In this document: in pieces, positions 9,605 through 45,298 of the stretch | How the letters are laid out: every line of letters begins with the position of its first letter | Position numbering within the stretch: the first letter of the stretch is position 1 | Source of the DNA: Macrostomum lignano | Taxonomy: Eukaryota | Reading direction: 5' to 3' | DNA length: 64,000 nucleotides | NCBI GenBank assembly: GCA_002269645.1 | Contig: NIVC01000298.1 | Location: 62,001-126,000, forward strand | Notes under the pieces: model-generated | Seen by the model: the letters and a program-made list of their open reading frames with translations, nothing else | Database searches by the model: none | What the model was told of the DNA's origin: nothing | Made by a program: the position numbers and the translations under genes

Positions 9605-10180
9605 ATGGCAGACAACTTGAAGCGTATCGTTTGTCTACTCAATCAGACCAATGATTCAGGCGAACAAGTTAACTTTGCTAATAGAAACGATTCCGCTTCC
9701 AAACAGAGTTTATCAACCAAAGATACTGCTGCTGACAGCGAAAACATAGCTAATCTTTGTTTGAATTTGTCATATCGAGATATGTCATCTGTTGCTGTGT
9801 CATCTATTAATGATCTCAATGATCTCAATCTGAGCTTGGACCTGTCGATGAGCCTCGAGACCAGTCGCGGCGATAAGAAACAGCTGCTTAATAAAGAATT
9901 TCAAGTGCCATTGAAGTTGGCCATCGGCGAGAGACTGAAGCAGTTCCAACCGTCTACTACAGCGCCCACTACAGGAGGAATGTCCGAGGTCACCGTGCAG
10001 TCCTCTACTGGTCGCCTGTCGCACGCTGGCGACAACATGTTGCCTAGAAACGGATTCTGCGGAATCCTAAGCGACGAATCCGAGTCGTCGAATATATTTA
10101 AACTCGGCCACAGCAGCAGCTTCTGTTGTCCCGGCAGCAGCAGCAGCGGCATCGGCGGCGCTTCTGAAAGCAATATATGA
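9605..10180 (+). CDS. Hypothetical Ser-rich protein (191 aa), no recognisable domain
   Basis: ATG-initiated ORF in a GC-elevated island within AT-rich DNA; no motif recognised. Confidence 0.3.
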   Translation: MADNLKRIVCLLNQTNDSGEQVNFANRNDSASKQSLSTKDTAADSENIANLCLNLSYRDMSSVAVSSINDLNDLNLSLDLSMSLETSRGDKKQLLNKEFQVPLKLAIGERLKQFQPSTTAPTTGGMSEVTVQSSTGRLSHAGDNMLPRNGFCGILSDESESSNIFKLGHSSSFCCPGSSSSGIGGASESNI

Positions 10181-10833
10181 CCAACTTTTGAACGTATTGC
10201 TGTCATTTTTTGTTACAAAGTGACTGGTGAAATTTTTTTCGGAAGCCAGATAAAAAACGCACGGAGACCGAGAAGTTGATGAAGGAGATGCAGAGACTAA
10301 ACAGAGGGAGAAGAGAGCGACAGATTAAAAGCGAAGAAGCGATCCTTGTCTCTCTGCCATTTTGATTTTTTCGTCGTCAAACGAAAAAGTTGGGTAGTTT
10401 TTTCGATGAATAAATACAAGCGTGGAAGTTTATTTTGCCTATGGCCATTTTTTTGCAGAGTTCTGAAGCTATAAAAATTGAGAAATCTAACTTTACTTCT
10501 CAATCTGATCTTAATTTTTTTATTTTAATTGGCTAGAGCAAAATTTCGGGCCGTTTAAACTATGAGCATAGATCCCATTTAAGAAGCAAAATATGAAATT
10601 ATCTAATAAGTACGTTAGTTACTCTTAGTAGATGACGAGCTCACAGAGTTGCCATAGACAATCCTTTTAGAAGCCATTAACTAAGGCTATTGTCGTTTTG
10701 ACGTCTCTATTAGATTGTACAAACTACAAATGAATATTGTCAGCGTGCAAAAGAACACCACATCATGGTCTAAATAAATGGCAAAAGCTATATAAATAGC
10801 CACTGGTTTAAGTGCATCAATACGTAGCGCATC

Positions 10834-11831
10834 ATGCTGCGTCACTTGAACTGTATGCTCGGCAGTCGAACTGGCACCGCTGCTGAGAGGTCCGAAGCCG
10901 GCGCAGCAGTGCATACAGACAGCGCAGAGCGTCTAGCTACGGCTCTTGGCCAGAACGAGTCTACATCGCCGTCTGTGAAATCGAGAAGTGTCATCACCGG
11001 CGTTGCAGCGAATGGCGATTGTCCTGGTATGTCTCCGGGACCACAAGGTGACGCCTGTCTTGCCGGCCCCGTGAGCTTGTCCGGTGATCTCATCACTTTA
11101 TTGCCGGCAGGAACAGCCAATATTAGCCTCACTTGCCGTCTGTTCTCTAGCTTTGGTAAGCTACTGACTCACTTTGAGGACGATCTTGAGCTGTACCCGA
11201 GCGCCGATGCTGTCCGATCTCTGGTCAGAGATCCCATCGCGTTTGAACTGCCAGAATCTGTCGAGATTTCGCGGTCTCAAACGAAGCAAAGCCAGTCAAA
11301 TATCGAAGAGCTGCAGCAGAAAAACTACTGCAACAATTGGCAGTTTGGAAATCAAAAAAGAATCAAGACAGCCATAGCCAGCGCGTAGTTCGAGTTGAGA
11401 CGCCGTCTGTACTGACCAGTTCAACAATATCCAGCCTATTCAGTGCGACAGCCAATACCAATAGCGCTAGAAAGGCTAATAAAAAGAAAGCAAAATCATG
11501 CTACAATTACGAGTGCGATTTTCGTGTCAATCTTTCGCCTGGTCCCCAGCGGTCCTGCGACTACTATTTTGGTCCGATTAAAGGTCTGCATCCGAGCGCT
11601 GTTCCGCCGCGCTCAGAGACATTGACGCCGTCGTTGCGTCAGCTGCGTGGCAGCAGTCGATGCCAGAAGCTGCAGCGCTGTCGCCCCCTGTCGCCGCCAC
11701 TGCTTCTCGAACTGGACGGTTTTTCTGGCCGCACCGAGGCCTTGGGCTGCGTGCCGTCCGTGCCAGTAGCTCGGCCGCGTCTGGTCACTCATCCAGTTCG
11801 GGGTCCTGGTCGCATCGGGCGTGGACGATAG
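10834..11831 (+). CDS. Hypothetical protein; two overlapping ORFs (10834-11388, 11337-11831), possibly one frameshifted gene
   Basis: GC-rich island; ORFs overlap across an A-run (AATCAAAAAAGAATC ~11350); no motif recognised. Confidence 0.25.
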
Positions 11832-12427
11832 AGCTGTCTTCACACTTCACCCACGTGGTGGTTATAATTTAACATCGTCTGTTAACTATTGAATTCAGAA
11901 AACGCTGAACGCACTTAGCACTGAACGCTTATAACATTTTTATTTATTAACTGTACGATATATAAAACGTACGATGCTGTCTGTCTTGTTGATTGCTTAA
12001 TTATATTCTGTCAAAAATGGCTACTTGTTGCTTTTTAATGCTGCAACTCTATCCCTCCACAGAACTGAGCCGGGTCATAAGTCACGTAAACAAATACGCG
12101 AAATCCTATTGGCTGACTATAATATTTAATGGCAAAGTATAAACTAACGTAACACTGCCGTGGGTTACAAACCCTGTTGTTCTTTCTGTTGCAGCATGCC
12201 AACAAGTCATTTGACTCTATTTTGTGCTTTCTGTCCAGGTGAAACAATGAAAATTAATTTATAAGTCATTTAGCTATTTGATAAAATATCATTATCCAAA
12301 ATGAAACATCCATTATGCAACGTACTAAAGATCAATGACATCCTGATTTTTCAGTGAACCTACTATCGACTCTGCGCCGAACTGAGACTGGATAAACATA
12401 AGTTAAAGTAATCAACCTATGAATAGC

Positions 12428-25022: not shown

Positions 25023-25811
25023 ATCACAAACCCGAAATATCACAAACCCGAAATAGTGCAAACCCGAAATATCGCAAACCCGAAATAGCACAAACCCGAA
25101 GTATCACAAACCCGAAATATCACAAACCCGAAATATCACAAACCCGAAATAGCATAAACCCGAAATAGCATAAACCCGAAATAGCACAAACCCGAAGTAT
25201 CACAAACCCGAAATAGCACAAACCCGAAATAGCACAAACCCGAAATAGCATAAACCCGAAATAGCATAAACCCGAAATAGCATAAACCCGAAATAGCATA
25301 AACCCGAAATATCACAAACCCGAAATAGCACAAACCCGAAATAGCATAAACCCGAAATAGCATAAACCCGAAATAGCATAAACCCGAAATAGCATAAACC
25401 CGAAATAGCACAAACCCGAAGTATCACAAACCCGAAATAGCACAAACCCGAAGTATCACAAACCCGAAATAGCACAAACCCGAAGTATCACAAACCCGAA
25501 ATAGCACAAACCCGAAGTATCACAAACCCGAAGTATCACAAACCCGAAATAGCACAAACCCGAAGTATCACAAACCCGAAATAGCACAAACCCGAAGTAT
25601 CACAAACCCGAAATAGCACAAACCCGAAGTATCACAAACCCGAAATAGCACAAACCCGAAATAGCACAAACCCGAAGTATCACAAACTCGAAATAGCACA
25701 AACCCGAAGTATCACAAAACCGAAATATCACAAACCCAAAATAGCATAAACCCGAAATAGCATAAACCCGAAATAGCACAAACCCGAAGTATCACAAACC
25801 CGAAATATCAC
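25023..25811. repeat. 17-bp satellite (~46 copies) with two alternating variants
   Basis: AAACCCGAAATAGCA(C/T)A and AAACCCGAAGTATCACA, head-to-tail with no unique spacers. Confidence 0.97.
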
Positions 25812-25982
25812 AACTCCGAGAGTTAACTTAGTCGTAGTTTATTCGTAGAAATCCTTAAAAGTTTCTCCAAAACTCGTCATTTCTAATTGTTTGTACCAAG
25901 CTTATTGTCATGGCAACCATGTAAACGAAATAATTACATCCTGATACATTTTCTTTACATTCTAATTTTCAGTAACCACACG

Positions 25983-26457
25983 ATGTTGCGGCTGATTCCC
26001 GTTGTGCTGTTATTGGCGTCCTGCATCAGACCTATCAACGACCTTGAGATTGTATCGAATCCGCATAATTGCCGGCCTACCTACTTTAACAATAGTACTA
26101 ACGGACACGAGAACTGTCCCAGACCATGCTTCGATCGAGTCCATTTTGCAAGGTTAAGCATTCCGGCAATATGTTCTCGTTGCTGCCGTCATTGGGCTCA
26201 TTATGACTGCCTGCTTCGGCAGCGGCCATGTGCCAGCGTCACATCTACTACAACTGCGACTAGAACTTCACCCAGCAGTTCCAGTCCTACTTCATCACGA
26301 GACTGTCATTTCCCAACTGTCAGCTCTTCGGGGCCGCCAGGGCAAGTGGATGTTGCTAGCGGCACAACCAAAATTGGTTATTTTTATTTCGCCATTTTAT
26401 GCTTTGGTACTGTCATTGGAATTTGTTACTTTCTTTGGGACGTGTTCAGCAAGTCAG
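25983..26457 (+). CDS. Cys-rich type-I membrane protein paralog A, coding exon 1
   Basis: Signal-like MLRLIPVVLLLASC; CPRPCFD-x13-SRCCRHW-x4-C; Ser/Thr stalk; TM YFYFAILCFGTVIGICYFLW; phase-1 donor G|GTGAGT at 26458; acceptor ATTTTCAG just upstream of the ATG. Confidence 0.75.
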
Positions 26458-26896
26458 GTGAGTCGTACAGCTACCTTCGTCCCGTTGAATCCCGGTGAAA
26501 ACGTTACCTTGACAAGAATCGCTAAACAGCCATTGGAAACCACTCACTAGTGACGTTTTAACGACTCAAACGACTGTAATGCTATTAGCATCGTTGTGTT
26601 AGTGCTTAACTTTCTTTTAACCCAAGTAGACTAAATAGAGCTGTTATAAATGTGAAATTCGATTCTAATTCATAACGTGACGCAGATGCAACTCAGTGGT
26701 TCTACAGCGACTCTGTAATACCTCAGATGCGACTTAGAGTCGCATCTAGAGTCACTTTTCTACTTTACCTGTGAAAGTGACGCTTCTTTGCCTAGGTACC
26801 GTCTTCATCGGGAATGCGTGTGACTGCTTGCCTTGATTTGAATTCTTCTGTGAATTGACTAGCAAATTTAATGATATAAATTTTAACGTCTTTCAG

Positions 26897-27309
26897 GTCC
26901 TTTATCTCGTTTAATCATGCTCTTGAAGCGTCAATTTAAGAACAAAAACGAACCAGATCAGTCTGTTCAGGAGACTGAAGCCGCCCAGGCCAAGGATGAC
27001 GGTGATGCACAGGCAGATTCGGCCTTAATTGATAATATTACAGCAGCAGGTGCAGATAACACGGAGTCTAAGAATGACATTAAAACGCGGTCGCCTTCTT
27101 CGAATGCTAATTTTATGCCTGTCGGTGCTCCTGTGGAGAGTCATATCGACGATGATGAGGTGAGCACATTGTATACTACCGGTGGAAATCAGAGAGCTGC
27201 TCCGCAACGAAATCGGACTAAATCTACTAGCAGCAGCCAAGTATTGGGTGGAGAATTTGAAACGGTTCAAGTCCTGTCGCCAGCTTCTACGCGCGTGTCC
27301 CAAAAGTGA
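26897..27309 (+). CDS. Cys-rich type-I membrane protein paralog A, coding exon 2 (cytoplasmic tail)
   Basis: Acceptor TCTTTCAG; phase 1 puts it in frame with ORF 26917-27309; joined 888 nt, 295 aa. Confidence 0.7.
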
Positions 27310-27808
27310 GATTTGAACTCGCGCTAAGCACCGTGGTTGCTAAATCCGATCGCTTGGTGGTTTTCGAACTTGGCTTAGCCACTTCAATCGTATTTTAGAC
27401 ATTGTAAATAATTTAAATATGTCATTTATCATTCCAAAAAAGAAATTATTAATGGTTTTTAATATACATGATGTATATACTCGTACATATGTATTATCAT
27501 TTTATTAAATGCGCACACTTGAGTCTTCAGGTGAAATACTATATTCTTCTCTGCAGATTTCATGTTCAAAATGCTCACGGGGAGAGCTATAAAATTTTCA
27601 ACTGCACTTAAAAACAGGAGGTGAACTTTACTTTCCTAAAAACAAGACTAGCTTTCTGCGTGCTGATTGCATAATTGCAAAACTTGTTTTCTCGTTTGCT
27701 GTTTCGTCTAAAAAATATTCTGTAACTATTTTTTCTTTTGCTTTCTTTCGCTTCGCTTTGTAATTAAACATTATTACAAAATTTACAATCTGCATCCTCT
27801 GTGTGCGC

Positions 27809-30413
27809 TGTTGTGTATTGAACGCGTAGGTTGGTTGCTAGAAAAACTTAGTGAGTCTCGCCGGACCACGGTCTGTATTTATATATTAGCATGCACGCTG
27901 TGAGAAAAATTGGATGTTAGATTATTGCGTAACGCGTTTCGCAAATCAACGTGCCCGACGGGCCGCAAACTGAACACAGAGTTAAGTACGTATGGTCGCG
28001 CACCCACAACATCCTCCCCACATGAGATTCCCCTAAGTAATCGCATGTCAGTTCAGTGCATCATACACGGTTCAGTTCGGGTAGCGCATTGGCGGGCGAC
28101 GCTCGCGCTCTGACCTTCTCAGCACCGGCGGGGGTGCCGGCGGGTCCCCAGCGAGATCATCAGGCGGTCGTGGCGGATCCAACTCCGGGCCGCCGCCACC
28201 TTCGTCGAGCTGCGCGTCGCCATCGTCGTCGCTTCCTTTGCCAGGTCCGGCCGGCACGCAGCGCCGCAGGTGCCACCGCTTGCCGTTTTCGAGCAGCACA
28301 GTTGTCTTGAATCGCTTGCGAACCCGGAACGGCCTGGCGAGCTTCGGCTCCAGCTTGCCAGGTGCCACCGGCTTGGAGATGTGCACCCAGGAGCCGTCTT
28401 GGATGACCGCGGTCCGCGCCGCCGATGCATGCCGCCGACGGTCGGTGTCGCTCTTTGCTCGCTGCTTTGCCTTGGCGACCCGGTCATGAGCCGACGTCGG
28501 CCGCTTGGCTTCCGAGTCCGGTTGGAGTGCGAGCAGCGGGGTGCGCATTGGTCGGCCAGTCATGAGCTCGTGTGGACTCGAACCCGTGACGTGCGTTGGG
28601 GTCGCCCTATAGGCCGCGACGACAGCTCGGACGGCCTTGCAGAAGCTCCACCCGGCGACCAAGTGCGCTGTCACGCCCTCGCCGAGAGTGCGGTTGAATC
28701 GCTCGACGTTGCCGTTTTGTTCTGGACAGTACACTGCCGTTCGCTTGTGTTCGATCGCCAGGCTCGCCAGGTACTCGTCGAACTCGCGGCCGAACTGGGG
28801 TCCATTGTCGGTTGTGATGCTTTTCGGGATGCCCCACCTCGACCAGATGACCTCGAGGAAGTCGACGACTACCTTGGTTGTGACCGATTCTACGAGCGCG
28901 ACTTCTGGCCATCGGCTGAACCGGTCGATGAGCACGATCGCGAATCGCTGGTGACGCGGCGCCGCTCTGAACTCTCCGCAGATGTCGAGCTGCAGCTCCT
29001 GCCAGGCTCCTGCTGGCGTGCTCGGCTGTTGCCTGATCGGCTCGAAGAAGTCCTTGGAGTTGTCCTGGAGTTGTGAGCCCTCGTCACCGAGATGGTTAAT
29101 TTGAAGAGACACACCAAACTTCGAGAAGTCGGAGCGCCCAAGAAGGCTTGAGCTGCCCTCTGTGATCTGGAAACAGACTGAGGCCGTCTTGTCCTTGTAC
29201 ATTACCGGGAGCGTCGCTGTCCCGTAGGTCCTGATGTGCGAGCCGCCGTAGGCCACGAGCCGTGCTGGAGGTCCGCTTCCCTTGGTTGCGTGTCGTCGAA
29301 CTCTCTGGAAGTCGGACATGCTGATCACCGACACGGAGGCACCGCTGTCCAGCGTCAGCGTCAGCAGCTCGTCGCGGACCGCGCATTCGATGTTGTGGAC
29401 GGCAGTCGGATCCTGGTTCGCGACTTGCAGGATGGTGCTCACCTCCTCGCCGACTGTTGCCACCGTCTTGCTTCGGCATACAGCGGCAAAGTGGTTCGGC
29501 TTATTGCAGTTGTTGCACCTTTTTCCCATTGCTGGGCACTTGTGCTCCTTGCTGTAGTCGCCGCCGCATCGCCTGCACTTCTCGCTGTCCTTGCGCGTTT
29601 TGGGCTTGGCTATGACTCTCTGCTTTGAGACGGCGTGCACTGTCTTTTGAGACGCCCCTGATGTGCCGTTGAGGACCTTGGCTTCGTTGATGGCTGTCTC
29701 GATTTGGTTGGCGAGCTGCAGGGACTTCTCCAATGTCAGGTCGTCTGGTTCCATCAGCAGCCTTTCACGGATACGTGACACGCACGTTTTCTCGATAAGC
29801 TGATCGCGGACCATCTCATTTGTCAGGTCCTTGAACGCGCAATCGGCCGCGAGCTGCTGCAGATCTCTGACGAACTGCTGCACCGGCTCCTCTGGTCGCT
29901 GCTCCCTGCACCGAAACCTGTAGCGAGCTCCTATGACGCTCTTGTTCGGCACGAAGATTTTGTCCAGTTCTTCGAGCAGCTTCTTCGTGTCGTTCGCCTC
30001 CACGCTTTCCGCCTGCCGTTGGCCTTCCGGCCCGAGGCAGTGTCGAAGGACGGCCATTTGTCTCGCCTCCGACATTTTGTCCAGTTCCGTTGCTGTTGAA
30101 TAGATCGAGAACTGACTTTTCCACCTTGGCCACGGGCAGCTTGGCTCGCCCGGGCTAGCCAGGTACGGCGTTGGTGGGTTGAGACTGAAGTCTGCCATCT
30201 TCGTCGCCAATGTTGTGTATTGAACGCGTAGGTTGGTTGCTAGAAAAACTTAGTGAGTCTCGCCGGACCACGGTCTGTATTTATATATTAGCATGCACGC
30301 TGTAAGAAAAAATGGATGTTGGATTATTGCGTAACGCGTTTCGCAAATCAACGTGCCCGACGGGCCGCAAACTGAACACAGAGTTAAGTACGTATGGTCG
30401 CGCACCCACAACA
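27809..30413 (-). mobile_element. Gypsy (Mag-like) LTR element lacking RT/RNase H
   Basis: 203-bp LTRs TGTTG...CAACA at 27809-28011 and 30211-30413 (3 differences seen); 5-bp TSD TGCGC at 27804-27808 and 30414-30418; PBS TGGCGACGAAGATGG; PPT TGGGGAGGA. Confidence 0.95.
28072..30198 (-). CDS. Gag-aspartic protease-integrase polyprotein (708 aa), no RT/RNase H
   Basis: Gag with zinc knuckles CRRC..HKC and CNNC..H..VC; protease LDSGAS; integrase core LQLDICG, IDRFSRWPE, TDNGPQF, NVERFN; no YxDD or RNase H motifs. Confidence 0.93.
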   Translation of the reverse strand: MADFSLNPPTPYLASPGEPSCPWPRWKSQFSIYSTATELDKMSEARQMAVLRHCLGPEGQRQAESVEANDTKKLLEELDKIFVPNKSVIGARYRFRCREQRPEEPVQQFVRDLQQLAADCAFKDLTNEMVRDQLIEKTCVSRIRERLLMEPDDLTLEKSLQLANQIETAINEAKVLNGTSGASQKTVHAVSKQRVIAKPKTRKDSEKCRRCGGDYSKEHKCPAMGKRCNNCNKPNHFAAVCRSKTVATVGEEVSTILQVANQDPTAVHNIECAVRDELLTLTLDSGASVSVISMSDFQRVRRHATKGSGPPARLVAYGGSHIRTYGTATLPVMYKDKTASVCFQITEGSSSLLGRSDFSKFGVSLQINHLGDEGSQLQDNSKDFFEPIRQQPSTPAGAWQELQLDICGEFRAAPRHQRFAIVLIDRFSRWPEVALVESVTTKVVVDFLEVIWSRWGIPKSITTDNGPQFGREFDEYLASLAIEHKRTAVYCPEQNGNVERFNRTLGEGVTAHLVAGWSFCKAVRAVVAAYRATPTHVTGSSPHELMTGRPMRTPLLALQPDSEAKRPTSAHDRVAKAKQRAKSDTDRRRHASAARTAVIQDGSWVHISKPVAPGKLEPKLARPFRVRKRFKTTVLLENGKRWHLRRCVPAGPGKGSDDDGDAQLDEGGGGPELDPPRPPDDLAGDPPAPPPVLRRSERERRPPMRYPN

Positions 30414-30988
30414 TGCGCATTTACTGTAATACGATTAATAATCATCATAAGAAAAAATGTATATTTTTACCAGTTATGTTAAATATAAAAATCTCCATGT
30501 CACTTGTCATTCTGCAATCTCTAAACTCCAAGTGTTTTTTAGCTATTCATATTTTTTTATCATTTTTTATGAAATATTTTTTATAAATTTTCACAATCGA
30601 CCTTTTTCTATATTGATAAAGTGAAGCTTTATAGACCAATAAATAAGCGTACAAGTTCCATCTACGGTGGACTTCTTCTGTTTTTCGACTTTGTAGTTTT
30701 TCATTGATTTTATTTGCCATAAATATGCTATTTAACATTCGTAGGTTTTGTTAGAAGCAGAAGCCTATTTCGACTGGATGTTTTTTACAAGCTCGAAACT
30801 TCACATTGTTTAAAACTTGCTAGTCGCTACCGCTGGCTCAAAACTTATTACTAATCCAGCCATGCAGAATTTCAAAGCTTGTAAAAACGTTATGATACTA
30901 TAGGTACCACTGGTATGTATAGTGTAGCATAGTGTGATCAGAAATCTAATAGAAGATTCATATATTTCAGCCGATTGGAATCAAAGCA

Positions 30989-31436
30989 ATGAATTTGCTA
31001 TGGTACTCCGCGTTGACGCTCTCCTTGTCATTTAACTGCGTTGACGCGCCGCCGCAGTTGCAAGTTGACACGAACCTGCCAGATAGTAATTATTACTATA
31101 ACAAACGAACTGACTCACTGGCTAAGTGTCCTGACGTATGCTTTGATCCAAGATTTGTTGAAATGCTGGCAAGGCCGATATTTTATTCAAAATGTTGTCG
31201 TCTATGGAACGATAGTAATTGCATAATGCAAGTCAATGTAAAGAATTCGGATACTACTATGACGGATACTACTAAAAGTACTAGTAGTAGCACTCGCCAG
31301 AAGTGTTCTTGCAGCACAATCCCAGCGTCAATACCAACTCCAACGCAAGAGACTTGCTTATCTGGCTGCTTTTGGACCTTTGTCTTTGTGGTTCCAGTTA
31401 TCGTTTTAGTTGTACTGGATTTCTGTGGAATATCGC
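30989..31436 (+). CDS. Cys-rich type-I membrane protein paralog B, coding exon 1
   Basis: Signal-like MNLLWYSALTLSLSFNCVDA; CPDVCFD-x13-SKCCRLW-x4-C; Thr/Ser stalk; TM CFWTFVFVVPVIVLVVLDFC; phase-1 donor C|GTAAGT at 31437; acceptor TATTTCAG just upstream of the ATG. Confidence 0.75.
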
Positions 31437-31589
31437 GTAAGTATTGGGCATTACTCTCTAGTCTCTAGTAGTCTGCATTATCAATTTTTATATACGAGCT
31501 TTCTTACTTGTCAAAGTCCTGCGTTAAAAATATATAAAAAAAAGATAAAAGGTACTTAGGAATTCCTAAAGCTAAACCCTGAGAAACCC

Positions 31590-31760
31590 TCTTAGACTCA
31601 GCATCTCAGCGATTCCCCAATGAGCTTTGGCATATCAACAATTCTCCCCATGAGCCTTAGCATCTCAGCAATTACCCCGTAAGCCTTGACATCCCAAAAA
31701 TTCCCCCGTAAGCCTTTAGCATCTAGCTCTCAAGATTTTCCCCATGAGCCTTGAAATCCC
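31590..31760. repeat. Degenerate ~30-bp tandem repeat in paralog B intron
   Basis: Recurring (T/G)AGCC(T)TAGCATCTCAGCAATT.CCCC-type units. Confidence 0.65.
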
Positions 31761-31980
31761 ACCTCTGAATTAATCGATTGACGCTCCAGGGGATGTAGAC
31801 CCTATTCTATTACTTATTTTTATAAGCGGAATATGTTGCTATTTTTAATATTTACAGTTTAAAAGATCAAAGCTTTAAATAAGTGAAACGTCCTAATAAA
31901 AAAACCCTTTAAATAGTTAACACTAAATACGCTCGCATATCATAAACAATTAAAAATCTTATTAATATCACCATTTTTAG

Positions 31981-32081
31981 GTCCGTGTACATGGCTGTTC
32001 GTTAAACTACAGAACATCTGTCGCGGTTCACGAAGGCATACTAAATTGTCCATAAGTAGCGGCGATATCATGCAGAGATAA
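31981..32081 (+). CDS. Cys-rich type-I membrane protein paralog B, coding exon 2
   Basis: Acceptor CATTTTTAG|GTCC like paralog A (TTTCAG|GTCC); (R)PCTWLFVKLQNICRGSRRHTKLSISSGDIMQR*. Confidence 0.6.
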
Positions 32082-41600: not shown

Positions 41601-42669
41601 CGTCTGCGTTGCCGTGTTGGCGCCCTCGGCGAAAGATGACCTTGAAGTTGAACTAATCAAGCAGCTGCCTGCAGCCATCTGGCCAGCTGGCCTTCGGGCT
41701 CTTTGAATTCCAGCAGATAGGTGAGCGCCTGCATGGTGATCCACTCGAATAGTGAAGGCGCGTAGCAGCAGGTAGCTCCGGAACTTCTTAACGAACTCGG
41801 CGACCGCCAGGAGCTCGCGCCGCGTCACACAATAGCTGCGCTCGGCTTTGGACAGGGCACAGCTGCCGTAGGCGATGACCCGCTCTTTGCTCGCCTGCAC
41901 TTGCGACAGCACCGCGCCGATTGCGCAGTCGCTCGCCTCGGTGTCGAGGATGAATTCGGAGTCCGACTCGCTTATGTCCAGGAATGCCAGGATCGGAGCT
42001 GACAGCAGCGCTTGTTTCAGCTGGTTGAAGGCCGCTTCGGCTTCTGGCGTCCACTCGAAGTGGTCGGCAGTACCAGGCGGCGCAGAGGCTCGGTGATTTT
42101 GACGTATTAGCGCACGAATCTTCGGTAGTAGGAGGTCATACCGAGGAAGCTCTTGACGTCCTTCGAGCTCGGGGCACCGGCCAGTCCCGCACAGCCATGG
42201 TCTGGCCCTTATCGACGGTGATGCTGGTCTTGCTGACGCGGTGGCCCAGGACTAACATGCTGGTATTTGCGAATCGGCACTTTGACGACTTGAGGCGCAG
42301 GTTGAACTCGCGCAGTCGCTCCAGAACTGACCGCAGCCGATCGTTGTGCTGGCCGATGGTCTGGCCCATCACAATGACGTCGTCAATGAACACATTCCGT
42401 AGTCCGAACTGTAGTGACTTGGCTTGTGTTGTGTGGGGTGCTGGGGGGGGGGTTGCTGCGTACACTTTACCATCGTGCTCTTTAACTCTCTCCTTCGCTT
42501 GTTCTTTTTTTCGCGCACGTGACTAATATGTCTATTTTACAGTCCCCAAATTATTGATCGGTTAAAACACTTTTTCGACAAATACATATATGAATGATTT
42601 TATCATGCTATCGCATAAGCATCTTTCTGCCACGCAAACTAAGTGAAGTCTTTACAGTGGCGACGATGC

Positions 42670-43947
42670 ATGAGCTTGGTTGGCTCAATAGAACCCTATG
42701 AAGAGGGCACTGAAAAGTGGATTCAGTACCAAGAAAGACTGGAGCAGTATTTTGAGGCCAATGATATCAAAGAAGAGAAGAAGCGTGCCGTTCTCCTTAG
42801 CGTCTGCGGCAAGAAGACGTATCAGTTGCTTGCCAGCCTGCTGTCTCCAGAGTCGCCTGCCCAGTCCAGCTACACAGCGATCTGCGCTAAGCTGAAAGAG
42901 AATTTCGACCCTGAGCCCCCTGAGATCGTGCTACGTTACCGTTTCTACTCCAGGAGTCGCCAAGTTGGTGAATCGATTGCGGATTTTCTCGCGGATCTTC
43001 GCAGACTGGCACGGGACTGCAACTTCGGCGGCAGCCTGAATGACATGATCAGAGACCGGCTCGTGCTTGGCATCGCTGACGACAGCATCCAGCGAAGGCT
43101 TCTTTCCGAGAAGAAGCTGACTCTCGAAACCGCAATATCTCTGGCGCAGGCTCAAGCGTCGGCCGCTGAGGGCAATCTCGTGATGAAATCTGCGAGTCAG
43201 GACGCCTTTCAGATAGCACACCAGCCACAGTCCACTAGACGCTGCTTTCGTTGCCGCTCCCAGCGGCACGTCGCGGCGAAGTGCCCGTTTTCTGACAAGA
43301 AGTGCTTCAACTGTTCGAAGGTGGGCCATACGGCTGCTGCCTGTAAGTCTCCTGCGGGTTCGAATCGTCGCATAGACCATAATGTGAGAGAGGTTGAGGT
43401 CGATGAAGAAGAGGCACATTCGCTGCACGTGATGGCTGAACGGTGTGGGAAGATTCCACCGATCGAGACCACGGTCATCATCGAAGGCACGCCAGTTCGG
43501 ATGGAGGTCGACACGGGCGCATCTGTCTCGCTCATATCTTCAGAAACATTTTGCTCAGAGCTGCGGGAAGGACCAAAGCTAGAACCTGCCAACACTAAGC
43601 TGCGCACCTACTCAGGAGAGCCGGTCCCCCTGCTAGGTAAAATTACCGTCCGAGTGCAAGCTGCCGAAGCTGCCAAGGAGCTTCCACTGCTCGTAGTCGA
43701 GGGCTCTGGTTCGAACCTGATCGGCCGTGACTGGCTGGCATGTTTGCCGCTGGACTGGCGCAGCATCAACCAGGTGCGAAAAGATAGTGAGCACCCTGGA
43801 ATCCGCGCCCTGCTGGACCAGTATGCCGAGGTTTTCGAGCCGGGACTCGGCAAGTACGAGCTACAACGGACCGCCTGTGCAGCTGCATCTGAAAGCCGGG
43901 GCCTGGCCTCGATTTTTCAAGGCACGCAACGTCCCGTTTGCTCTTAA
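42670..43947 (+). CDS. Gag-protease of the nested element
   Basis: MSLVGSIEPY...W..Y.ERLEQYF.AN; IRDRLVLG; two CCHC knuckles (CFRC..H...C, CFNC..GH...C); protease VDTGAS; frameshift to pol near 43860. Confidence 0.9.
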   Translation: MSLVGSIEPYEEGTEKWIQYQERLEQYFEANDIKEEKKRAVLLSVCGKKTYQLLASLLSPESPAQSSYTAICAKLKENFDPEPPEIVLRYRFYSRSRQVGESIADFLADLRRLARDCNFGGSLNDMIRDRLVLGIADDSIQRRLLSEKKLTLETAISLAQAQASAAEGNLVMKSASQDAFQIAHQPQSTRRCFRCRSQRHVAAKCPFSDKKCFNCSKVGHTAAACKSPAGSNRRIDHNVREVEVDEEEAHSLHVMAERCGKIPPIETTVIIEGTPVRMEVDTGASVSLISSETFCSELREGPKLEPANTKLRTYSGEPVPLLGKITVRVQAAEAAKELPLLVVEGSGSNLIGRDWLACLPLDWRSINQVRKDSEHPGIRALLDQYAEVFEPGLGKYELQRTACAAASESRGLASIFQGTQRPVCS

Positions 43948-45298
43948 GACTAAGGTGGAGGCTCAGCTCGACAAGGAAATTGAGCAAGGTGTGCTCAGAC
44001 CAGTCAACAACTCGGACTACGCCTCGCCGATTGTGCCAGTGCTCAAGTCGGACGGTTCAATACGCATCTGTGCCGACTTCAAACAAACGGTAAATCTCTG
44101 TGTTAAACCTGACAAATATCCGCTACCGAGAATCGAAGAGCTTTTTGCTAAGCTGGCAGGTGGGAAAAAATTTACGAAGCTCGACTTGTCGCAAGCCTAT
44201 TCTCAACTGCCACTGGACGAAGCAGCCCAAGAGATTTGTACAATTAATACGTCCAAAGGCCTTCTGCGCTACACCCGTCTGCCTTTTGGAGTTGCTCCGG
44301 CCGTCGGTATTTTCCAACGACACATGGACAATCTGCTGCAGTCGATTCCGCATGTCGCCTGTTTTATCGACGATCTGATCATCACCGGTGTTGACGACGA
44401 AAGTCACTTGCGCTCACTAGAGTCAGTGCTCAAGAAATTGCACCAAAGCGGACTGCGCTGCGGCCTGAGCAAGTGCGACTTCATGCAGGACAGTGTCAGC
44501 TATCTGGGCCACCGGATAGACGCTGACGGTCTGCATCCGCTACCGGACAAGGTTCGTGCCATCGCCGACGCTCCAGCACCGCGAGATGTGACACAGCTTC
44601 GCAGTTTTCTTGGACTTGTCAACTATTACGGGAAGTTCATGCCCAACTTGTCCGCGGAGCTGTCGCCACTGCATCGTCTGCTCAACCAAGGTGCCCAGTG
44701 GCGCTGGGGCATTCAACAGGAGACCGCATTTAGGAAGTGCAAGTCGCTTCTCAGCAAAGCGCCGGTCCTCGCGCACTTCGACGAAAGTAAGCCGCTGATC
44801 CTGGAGTGCGACGCGTCGCCCTACGGCGTCGGAGCGGTCATCAGTCATCGAATTGATGGCATCGATCAGCCGATCGCGTTCGCTTCGCGCTCTTTGCACG
44901 ATGCTGAGACCAGGTACTCCCAGTTGGACAAAGAGGCTCTGGCGGTCATTTTCGGAGTGAAGCGGCTTCATGCGTATCTGTACGGCCGAAAGTTTACACT
45001 GATCAGCGACCGCAAACCGCTATTGGGTCTGCTACACGAGTCCAAGCCGATTTCAGCAATGGCATCCGGTCGAATTCAAAGGTGGGCGCTCATCCTGGCA
45101 GGCTACAGCTACACGATGGAGCACCGATCAGGTCGTTCGCTGCTCCGTGCGGACGCGCTGAGTCGACTGCCGCTGCCAGAGAGACCAGCAAAGGCACCGA
45201 CACCAGCCGATGTGGTGCTAGTCATGGACACGCTTGAGGGACCAGTGACTGCCGGAGACATTCGAGCTTTGACTAGAACGGACCCGATCCTGTCCTAG
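43860..45298 (+). CDS. RT-RNase H of the nested element, truncated before integrase
   Basis: ASPIVPV, RICADFK, YPLPRIE, LPFGV, FIDD, LRSFLGLVNYY, CDASPYGVGAV, YSQLDKEALAV, ADALSRLP; in-frame TAG at 45296-45298. Confidence 0.92.

What the first reader, a model, noticed from the sequence alone, without database searches (positions are those of the whole stretch)
25983..32081. Two paralogous single-pass membrane proteins define an unrecognised Cys-rich ectodomain
Both have signal peptide, the motif C-P-x2-C-F-D-x13-S-[RK]-C-C-R-x-W-x4-C with identical spacing, a Ser/Thr mucin-like stalk, one TM helix, a splice acceptor just before the ATG and a phase-1 intron right after the TM followed by an exon starting GTCC. 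Outside the motif they are highly diverged, so the motif appears selected. I cannot assign it to a known domain (not EGF, LU/Ly6, TNFR, WAP or ShK spacing). Tails differ greatly (~140 aa versus ~35 aa), as in receptor/decoy or adhesion pairs. The ORF track hides this because each gene is split.
Basis: partly seen in the sequence, partly recalled or inferred. Interest (0 to 1): 0.72.

Follow-up and report, generated by a model that had tools for sequence, protein, structure and literature searches.

The report
Flatworm-only pair of cysteine-rich membrane proteins
Two neighbouring two-exon genes in a Macrostomum lignano-type flatworm genome encode single-pass surface glycoproteins sharing a small cysteine-rich head with no detectable relatives outside this species, so they are a real but ordinary lineage-restricted orphan family, and only one of the two has transcript support.

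Summary
G1 (25983-26457 + 26897-27307, 295 aa) and G2 (30989-31436 + 31981-32081, 182 aa) share a signal peptide, the exact Cys motif, an S/T-rich stalk, one TM helix, a TTTCAG acceptor just before the ATG and a phase-1 intron followed by GTCC. They are homologous: BLASTP E=3e-8.

The window is syntenic, at 90-97% nucleotide identity, with M. lignano scaffold NIVC01000040.1. The G1 counterpart there is a deposited hypothetical protein, PAA92745.1. Its transcript-derived annotation uses the same splice junction.

The head has no hit in Pfam or in PDB sequences. In an exhaustive HMMER scan of 1.84 billion proteins it found only PAA92745.1. AlphaFold models were too poor to use (pLDDT 40-50).

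So the family is unassigned, but it is seen in one species only. G2 has no transcript or database support, and its copy on the other scaffold has lost the ATG and signal peptide.

The G1 head exon is more diverged between the two genomic copies than the adjacent non-coding DNA, which hints at fast evolution. The receptor/decoy idea is untested. Interest is modest.

The parts
25967..25972 (+). TTTCAG acceptor 10 nt upstream of the G1 ATG. It is the putative SL trans-splice acceptor.
   Evidence: Sequence. It matches the [T/C]TNCAG motif reported for M. lignano SL acceptors (PMC8629364). Its use is inferred, not shown.
25983..26457 (+). G1 exon 1: signal peptide (aa 1-14), N-terminal linker, Cys-rich head, S/T stalk and TM helix. 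It ends in phase 1.
   Evidence: The homologous exon in L001 (10001-10487) is part of the deposited model PAA92745.1.
26058..26231 (+). G1 Cys-rich head (aa 26-83). The strict motif is at 26115-26210.
26232..26372 (+). G1 mucin-like S/T/P stalk (aa 84-130), containing conserved Cys108.
   Evidence: 73% S/T/P in the richest 30 aa; alignment.
26373..26447 (+). G1 transmembrane helix (aa 131-155, IGYFYFAILCFGTVIGICYFLWDVF).
   Evidence: KD19 maximum 2.02. Basic residues follow it (KRQFKNK), consistent with the positive-inside rule.
26458..26896 (+). G1 intron, phase 1, GTGAGT...TTTCAG.
   Evidence: The same junction reproduces PAA92745.1 exactly in L001.
26897..27307 (+). G1 exon 2: cytoplasmic tail (about 137 aa, acidic and Ser-rich) and stop TGA.
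   Evidence: It is 96.8% identical to the L001 copy.
27809..30413 (-). LTR retroelement inserted between G1 and G2. It is not part of the genes but separates them. The LTRs are about 204 nt and 99% identical, the TSD is TGCGC, and the internal 712-aa ORF has an integrase core.
   Evidence: It is absent from the syntenic L001.
30965..30970 (+). TTTCAG acceptor 18 nt upstream of the G2 ATG. It is the putative SL trans-splice acceptor. The 18 nt are open and in frame with the ATG that ends the SL.
   Evidence: Sequence; SL sequence and acceptor motif from PMC8629364. Inferred only.
30989..31436 (+). G2 exon 1: signal peptide (aa 1-20), Cys-rich head, S/T stalk and TM helix. It ends in phase 1.
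31073..31231 (+). G2 Cys-rich head (aa 29-81). The strict motif is at 31127-31222.
31241..31354 (+). G2 S/T-rich stalk (aa 85-122) with Cys106/Cys108.
31367..31432 (+). G2 transmembrane helix (aa 127-148).
   Evidence: KD19 maximum 2.67. The tail that follows is basic.
31437..31980 (+). G2 intron, phase 1, GTAAGT...TTTTAG.
   Evidence: There is no transcript evidence.
31981..32081 (+). G2 exon 2: short basic tail and stop TAA.
   Evidence: The L001 copy keeps the frame and the same stop.

Best explanation
G1 and G2 are a tandem pair of lineage-restricted ('orphan') genes of Macrostomum lignano or a very close relative. Each encodes a type I membrane glycoprotein.

Domain order:
- A cleavable signal peptide.
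- A head of about 50-55 residues held by disulfides. It has five invariant Cys (C-x3-C-x17-CC-x7-C) plus one conserved Cys beyond the stalk.
- A Ser/Thr/Pro stalk of about 40 residues, expected to be O-glycosylated.
- One TM helix.
- A cytoplasmic tail: long, acidic and Ser-rich in G1; short and basic in G2.

Inferred mechanism:
- The rigid, glycosylated stalk holds the small head away from the membrane, where it acts as a binding or recognition module.
- Only G1 has a tail long enough to couple to intracellular partners.

Inferred expression:
- Both mRNAs probably get their 5' ends by spliced-leader trans-splicing at a TTTCAG acceptor just upstream of the ATG.
- G1 is probably the downstream gene of a transcription unit that starts with the PARG gene.

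Shown versus inferred:
- Shown: gene structure, paralogy, architecture, absence of detectable relatives, and transcript-derived support for the G1-type model.
- Inferred: topology, disulfides, glycosylation, trans-splicing, the binding role, and activity of G2.
For: - Gene models and architecture.
- Paralogy: BLASTP E=3e-8. The Cys, W, F-D and S positions are conserved although 6 of the 16 identical residues use different codons. Intron position, phase and the following GTCC are the same.
- Both genes are present in tandem in the syntenic M. lignano scaffold.
- PAA92745.1 (BOX15_Mlig023323g2) is reproduced exactly by L001 exons 10001-10487 and 10941-11314, which is the same junction.
- The GenBank annotation of that assembly is built from RNA-seq-guided transcripts cut at trans-splice sites (PMC5730564).
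- 'g2' marks the second gene of a transcription unit. The only upstream same-strand gene is PARG.
- The acceptors match the published SL acceptor motif.
- All three coding indels between the two G1 copies are in frame: 21, 15 and 18 nt.
- No relatives elsewhere.
Against: - No transcript or protein evidence could be examined for the window itself.
- G2 is unannotated everywhere, and its second genomic copy lacks the ATG and signal peptide.
- Between the two G1 copies the overall dN/dS is 0.75 and not distinguishable from 1. Recent purifying selection is therefore not demonstrated.
- Structure prediction failed (pLDDT 49.6 and 40.4), so a folded, disulfide-bonded head is not confirmed.
- Signal peptide, glycosylation and topology rest on simple rules only.
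Confidence: 0.65

Rival explanations
1. Only G1 is a working gene. G2 is a decaying or silent tandem duplicate (pseudogene in the making) that still has an open frame in this copy.
For: - G2 has no hit among 5.8 billion clustered proteins.
- Its exon-1 ORF is not on record.
- The transcript-based annotation of the syntenic scaffold calls PARG and the G1 homolog but nothing at G2.
- That copy has a deletion of about 190 bp that removes the acceptor, ATG and signal peptide.
- An LTR element has been inserted between G1 and G2 in the window.
Against: - The window copy has an intact start, signal peptide, splice sites and stop.
- After deep divergence from G1 (about 30% identity) it still keeps every motif Cys, the stalk, the TM helix and the intron phase.
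- The start-less copy keeps the frame through both exons to the same stop, and its 12-substitution TM patch stays hydrophobic.
Confidence: 0.3
2. The head is a very diverged member of an already described small disulfide-rich family (for example Ly6/uPAR three-finger, a TNFR-type CRD or PSI), too far away for sequence methods to detect.
For: - Small Cys-rich modules diverge quickly, and profiles built from three sequences are weak.
- The structure models were unusable, so fold-level similarity was not really tested.
Against: - No Pfam hit even at E<=10, with full proteins or with the isolated head.
- No PDB sequence or profile hit.
- The Cys count and spacing (C-x3-C-x17-CC-x7-C) fit none of the EGF, TNFR, LU, WAP, ShK, PSI or Kazal patterns tried (patterns written from memory).
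- The exhaustive HMMER scan found no bridging sequences.
Confidence: 0.12
3. Neither ORF is translated. They are chance or relic ORFs inside a long PARG 3' region or a non-coding transcript.
For: - Exons are not more conserved than introns between the two genomic copies.
- dN/dS is about 0.75.
- The deposited protein is only a 'hypothetical protein' predicted from a transcript.
Against: - Two ORFs that have diverged to about 30% identity keep an identical Cys/W motif and spacing, a signal peptide, a stalk, a TM helix, basic juxtamembrane residues and the same intron phase.
- All three coding indels are in frame.
- The motif occurs nowhere else in six frames.
Confidence: 0.04

Closest known systems
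PAA92745.1 / A0A267H3A0, 'hypothetical protein BOX15_Mlig023323g2' of Macrostomum lignano (286 aa)
   Same: It is the counterpart of G1 on a second, syntenic genomic copy (78% aa identity by BLASTP over 95% of G1). It has the same two-exon structure and junction, the same motif, stalk, TM helix and tail.
   Different: - It has a 7-aa deletion after the signal peptide and two insertions in the stalk.
- There are 12 non-synonymous changes in the head, including Pro to Leu in C-P.
- A 1-nt indel truncates the last 13 aa.
- It is uncharacterised and has no domain annotation.
Sialomucin-type type I membrane glycoproteins (for example CD164/endolyn and the CD34 family). This is a comparison by architecture only, from general knowledge.
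   Same: A signal peptide, a small Cys-containing globular part combined with an S/T-rich O-glycosylated stalk, a single TM helix and a cytoplasmic tail.
   Different: There is no sequence similarity (no Pfam hit). The order and size of the modules differ. Membership is not claimed.
Ly6/uPAR (LU, three-finger) surface proteins, including those of the flatworm tegument
   Same: A small disulfide-rich ectodomain displayed on the cell surface, with a CC doublet near its C-terminal end.
   Different: - LU domains have 8-10 Cys, an N-terminal L-x-C-x-x-C type start and a C-terminal CC-x(3-6)-CN, and they are usually GPI-anchored.
- Here there are five or six conserved Cys and CC-x7-C, with no CN and a TM anchor.
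- There is no UPAR_LY6 hit at E<=10.
Single-CRD TNFR-type receptors (for example BCMA/TACI and Drosophila Grindelwald), from general knowledge
   Same: One small Cys-rich module, a linker, a TM helix and a signalling tail. Pairs with long and short tails exist in that superfamily.
   Different: The TNFR CRD spacing pattern is not met. There is no TNFR Pfam hit. No ligand or tail motif has been identified.

Membership tests
G1/G2 family (this locus plus PAA92745.1) | Motif C-[PL]-x2-C-F-D-x13-S-[RKH]-C-C-R-x-W-x4-C in the N-terminal ectodomain | tested here: met
   It is present in G1, G2, PAA92745.1 and the L001 copy of G2, and nowhere else in six frames of the window or L001.
G1/G2 family (this locus plus PAA92745.1) | Signal peptide, S/T stalk, single TM helix, and a phase-1 intron directly after the TM helix | tested here: met
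   The signal peptide was judged by simple rules only.
Ly6/uPAR (LU) domain | Match to the Pfam UPAR_LY6 clan models; 8-10 Cys with C-terminal CC-x(3-6)-CN | tested here: not met
   No Pfam hit at E<=10. The pattern is absent (pattern from memory).
TNFR cysteine-rich domain | Six Cys with TNFR_NGFR spacing; Pfam TNFR_c6 match | tested here: not met
   No Pfam hit. The PROSITE-like pattern is absent (pattern from memory).
EGF-like, WAP, ShK, PSI and Kazal modules | The characteristic Cys spacing of each module, or a Pfam match | tested here: not met
Any family with a solved structure | Sequence or fold similarity to a PDB chain | tested here: inconclusive
   Sequence and profile searches found nothing significant. 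Foldseek gave 0 hits, but the model was low-confidence (pLDDT 49.6), so fold similarity remains untested.
SL trans-spliced, operon-resident genes of M. lignano | [T/C]TNCAG acceptor at the mRNA 5' end with SL-containing reads; repeat-adjusted distance under 1 kb to an upstream same-strand gene | tested here: inconclusive
   The acceptor motif is present 10 and 18 nt before the ATGs. The PARG CDS end maps to roughly window 24.4 kb, so the gap to G1 is about 1.55 kb, of which 789 nt is a 16-nt tandem array. The 'g2' name implies a shared transcription unit. SL reads were not available.
Mucin-like type I membrane glycoprotein (architecture class, not a homology family) | An O-glycosylated S/T/P-rich extracellular stalk next to a TM helix | not testable with these tools
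   The composition fits (63-73% S/T/P). Glycosylation itself needs experiment.

The most novel reading that the evidence does not exclude
The head is a genuinely new disulfide-bonded fold confined to macrostomid flatworms. It is under diversifying selection because it mediates a fast-evolving cell-surface recognition event, for example gamete or sperm-recipient interaction, or pathogen or allo-recognition, in this hermaphrodite. G1 would be the signalling form and G2 a short-tailed modulator. The only hint is that G1's head exon is more diverged between the two genomic copies (93.0%) than its own intron (96.5%) and 3' flank (98.2%) (Fisher p=7e-4). Non-synonymous to synonymous changes in the head are 12:1.
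Probability: 0.12. Interest if true: 0.55.

Novelty: new variant of a known kind. Interest (0 to 1): 0.3.

Why it matters
If both proteins are made, they define a small Cys-rich extracellular module that is absent from Pfam and PDB and has no detectable relatives in 1.84 billion representative proteins. That adds one more taxonomically restricted surface-protein family to a flatworm used as a model for regeneration and sexual selection.

The practical value is limited:
- It corrects or extends the annotation. G2 is unannotated, and G1 in this copy is unannotated.
- It offers a candidate fast-evolving surface protein for RNAi or in situ screens.

It does not bear on a long-standing open question, and orphan genes of this kind are common in flatworm genomes.

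Tried and rejected
- Pfam hmmscan of the full proteins and of the isolated heads at E<=10 gave only sub-threshold noise, all outside the head motif or plainly irrelevant: PRCD at G1 aa 161-198 and a plant F-box propeller model on G2.
- PDB sequence searches found nothing with phmmer. The profile search gave only zinc-finger and WW-domain chance matches with E>=0.06. The 'YYYNxxT' stretch of G2 mimics the WW core, but there is no other WW feature.
- The word-indexed search of 5.8 billion proteins found only PAA92745.1 for G1 and nothing for G2.
- The exhaustive HMMER profile search of 1.84 billion representatives gave two borderline hits (E about 5e-4). Both are internally repetitive, unrelated proteins and were rejected by inspection.
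- AlphaFold2 on G1 ectodomain plus TM gave pLDDT 49.6, and on the G2 head gave pLDDT 40.4. Both are unusable.
The contiguous exon-1 ORFs are not on record.
- Expression data for Mlig023323 were not found in full texts, nor in the stored (truncated) supplement of PMC5816591. A search for a single-cell atlas found no usable resource.
- Rfam gathering and an SL-sequence search of the window both found nothing.
- The idea that the genes belong to the neighbouring LTR element was rejected. The pair exists without the element in L001.
- I ran no further search on the PARG gene merely to confirm the 'g1' name.
Full report
**What is there.**
The region is eukaryotic, with GT-AG introns.
- Joining 25983-26457 to 26897-27307 gives a 295-aa protein, G1.
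- Joining 30989-31436 to 31981-32081 gives a 182-aa protein, G2.
- Both first exons end in phase 1 (475 and 448 nt). Both second exons begin with GTCC. The donors are GTGAGT and GTAAGT, and the acceptors are TTTCAG and TTTTAG.

Each protein has the same order of parts:
- A hydrophobic N-terminus with small residues at -3/-1 (ASC|I in G1, VDA|P in G2).
- The shared Cys motif.
- A stretch with 63-73% Ser/Thr/Pro.
- One strongly hydrophobic segment (Kyte-Doolittle 19-residue maxima 2.02 and 2.67), followed by basic residues.

The tails are about 137 aa (G1) and about 34 aa (G2).

**Is it more than chance?**
- The full motif occurs at 26115-26210 and 31127-31222, and nowhere else in the six-frame translation of the window.
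- BLASTP aligns 46 residues without gaps at 35% identity, E=3e-8.
- One further Cys beyond the stalk also aligns: G1 C108 with G2 C106/C108.
- Six of the 16 identical residues use different codons, and third positions are about 50% identical. The conservation is therefore at the protein level.

**Where the window comes from, and the second genomic copy.**
- G1's only database relative is PAA92745.1, 'hypothetical protein BOX15_Mlig023323g2' of Macrostomum lignano (78% identity).
- The scaffold carrying it (NIVC01000040.1, fetched as L001) is collinear with window 18.3-35 kb at 90-97% nucleotide identity. A PARG gene lies upstream on the same strand in both.
- The window is therefore a second copy of this locus, either a duplicated block or another assembly or haplotype of M. 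lignano or a sibling taxon. Such duplicated blocks are documented for this genome (PMC5730564).
- L001 also contains the G2 counterpart directly downstream. The tandem duplication therefore predates the split of the two copies.
- In the window the two genes are separated by an LTR retroelement at 27809-30413. Its LTRs are 99% identical, its TSD is TGCGC and it has an integrase-bearing ORF. L001 lacks it.

**Transcript support.**
- I rebuilt PAA92745.1 exactly from L001 10001-10487 plus 10941-11314, which is the junction homologous to 26457/26897.
- According to PMC5730564, the GenBank annotation of that assembly derives from an RNA-seq-guided transcriptome. Its transcription units were cut into genes at experimentally mapped trans-splice and poly(A) sites.
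- The G1-type spliced mRNA is therefore supported indirectly.
- The suffix 'g2' marks the second gene of a transcription unit. The only upstream same-strand gene is PARG. This assignment is an inference.
- The M. lignano spliced leader and its acceptor motif [T/C]TNCAG are given in PMC8629364.
- Both genes have TTTCAG shortly before the ATG, ending at 25972 and 30970. This is inferred, because no reads were available.
- The PARG CDS end maps to roughly window 24.4 kb. The PARG-G1 gap is therefore about 1.55 kb, of which 789 nt is a 16-nt tandem array.
- For G2 nothing supports expression:
  - It has no database relative.
  - There is no record of its ORF.
  - There is no gene call at that place in L001.
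- The L001 copy of G2 has a deletion of about 190 bp that removes the acceptor, ATG and signal peptide. It nevertheless stays in frame through both exons to the same stop.

**Is the head a known domain?**
- Pfam gave no hit in the ectodomain, even at E<=10, with full proteins or isolated heads.
- PDB sequences gave nothing with phmmer, and only chance matches (E>=0.06) with a profile.
- An exhaustive HMMER profile scan of 1.84 billion representative proteins returned PAA92745.1 (E=2.6e-31). It also returned two borderline, internally repetitive proteins, which I rejected on inspection.
- Spacing patterns for EGF, TNFR, LU/Ly6, WAP, ShK, PSI and Kazal, written from memory, are not met.
- AlphaFold2 with the three-sequence alignments gave pLDDT 49.6 and 40.4. 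The empty Foldseek result therefore says nothing about fold.
- Conclusion: the head is unassigned at sequence level, and fold-level relationships remain open.
- The family is seen only in this species. The searched collections probably hold little from other Macrostomum species, so 'species-restricted' is an upper bound on its narrowness.

**Evolutionary signals between the two genomic copies.**

| Segment | Identity to the L001 copy |
|---|---|
| G1 exon 1 | 93.0% |
| G1 intron | 96.5% |
| G1 exon 2 | 96.8% |
| G1 3' flank | 98.2% |
| G2 mature ectodomain | 319/320 nt |
| DNA upstream of G2 | 97.2% |
| G2 TM patch (43 nt) | 72% |

- G1 exon 1 against its intron plus flank gives Fisher p=7e-4.
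- In the G1 head, non-synonymous to synonymous changes are 12:1.
  - This gives omega of about 3.5. It is not significant on its own (p=0.19), but the rate is higher than the intron rate (p=0.02).
  - Overall omega is 0.75.
- All three coding indels in G1 are multiples of three.
- This pattern fits a translated gene whose exposed head evolves quickly. With two sequences it is a hint only.
- In G2 the mature ectodomain is almost identical between the copies, whereas the upstream DNA is 97.2% identical.
- A 43-nt patch in the G2 TM helix is only 72% identical (p=8e-8), yet it remains in frame and hydrophobic.
- This mosaic looks like gene conversion or a complex mutation. It is unexplained.

**How it most likely works.**
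- Shown: two tandem paralogs with type I membrane-protein architecture.
- Inferred from established principles (signal-peptide and positive-inside rules, O-glycosylation of S/T/P-rich stalks, disulfide formation in extracellular Cys-rich modules):
  - The head is a compact disulfide-stabilised binding module held away from the membrane by a glycosylated stalk.
  - G1's long, acidic, Ser-rich and probably disordered tail could couple to cytoplasmic partners.
  - G2 has only a short basic tail.
- I put 0.65 on 'real type I surface glycoprotein family, lineage-restricted'.
- I put about 0.3 on G2 being a silent or decaying duplicate.
- I put about 0.12 on the head being a diverged member of a known fold.
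- I put about 0.04 on non-coding.

**Comparison with what is known, and novelty.**
- The only true relative is the uncharacterised PAA92745.1.
- In architecture the proteins resemble sialomucin-type type I glycoproteins and single-CRD receptors. Every tested membership criterion for LU, TNFR, EGF and similar families failed, so no membership is claimed.
- I rate this a new variant of a known kind: a small Cys-rich head on a mucin stalk, with an unassigned head sequence.
- One copy is already deposited as a hypothetical protein.
- Orphan families are common in flatworms, so a specialist would not be very surprised. Interest is 0.3.
- The more novel reading is a new fold under diversifying selection in surface recognition. 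It is not excluded, and I give it about 0.12.

Noticed in passing
window 27809-30413 (-): A short LTR retroelement lies between G1 and G2. It has 204-nt LTRs that are 99% identical, TG...CA termini and a 5-bp TSD (TGCGC). Its single 712-aa ORF gave only an integrase-core hit and no RT. GC is 61%, against about 40% in the flanks. It is absent from the syntenic M. lignano scaffold, so it is a recent insertion, possibly non-autonomous.
   Followed up: partly
window ~50.8-63.3 kb (mostly - strand ORFs): This is a Maverick/Polinton-like element. ORF 51763-53010 matches a double-jelly-roll capsid-like domain (PF21738). ORF 59070-59864 matches a protein-primed family B DNA polymerase (PF03175). ORF 62321-63280 matches an rve integrase. 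ORF 61840-62304 gave a weak match to adenovirus protein X.
   Followed up: partly
window ~40.8-48 kb (+): A GC-rich (51-56%) LTR-retrotransposon pol region. ORF 42643-43947 encodes an aspartyl protease, and ORF 43727-45298 encodes RT plus RNase H.
   Followed up: no
window 25025-25813: A tandem array of 49 copies of a 16-nt unit (CACAAACCCGAAATAG) lies between the PARG gene and G1. It is also present, with a different copy number, in the syntenic scaffold.
   Followed up: no
window 31363-31405 vs L001 12458-12500: A hyper-diverged 43-nt patch (12 substitutions, 72% identity) in the G2 TM helix sits directly next to 320 nt of near-identity (319/320). The patch stays in frame and hydrophobic. 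It may be gene conversion from an unseen copy or a complex mutation. It is unexplained.
   Followed up: partly
window 30848-31042 vs L001 ~12133-12138: A deletion of about 190 bp in the other genomic copy removes G2's putative trans-splice acceptor, ATG and signal peptide. The rest of the reading frame is left open.
   Followed up: yes
window 30971-30991 and 25973-25985: The M. lignano spliced leader ends in ATG (PMC8629364). Trans-splicing at 30970 would put that ATG in frame with G2 with no stop, adding MPIGIKA. At G1 the SL ATG would be followed at once by TAA. This is pure sequence inference.
   Followed up: no
window 27260-27307 vs L001 ~11300-11352: A 1-nt indel plus a substitution makes the deposited homolog PAA92745.1 end 13 residues earlier than G1. 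The extreme C-terminus is therefore not conserved.
   Followed up: yes
window 18.3-24.4 kb (+): A PARG (poly(ADP-ribose) glycohydrolase) gene lies upstream on the same strand. It contains internal tandem repeats at 19.5-20.3 kb and 21.8-22.2 kb whose copy number differs from the syntenic scaffold.
   Followed up: no
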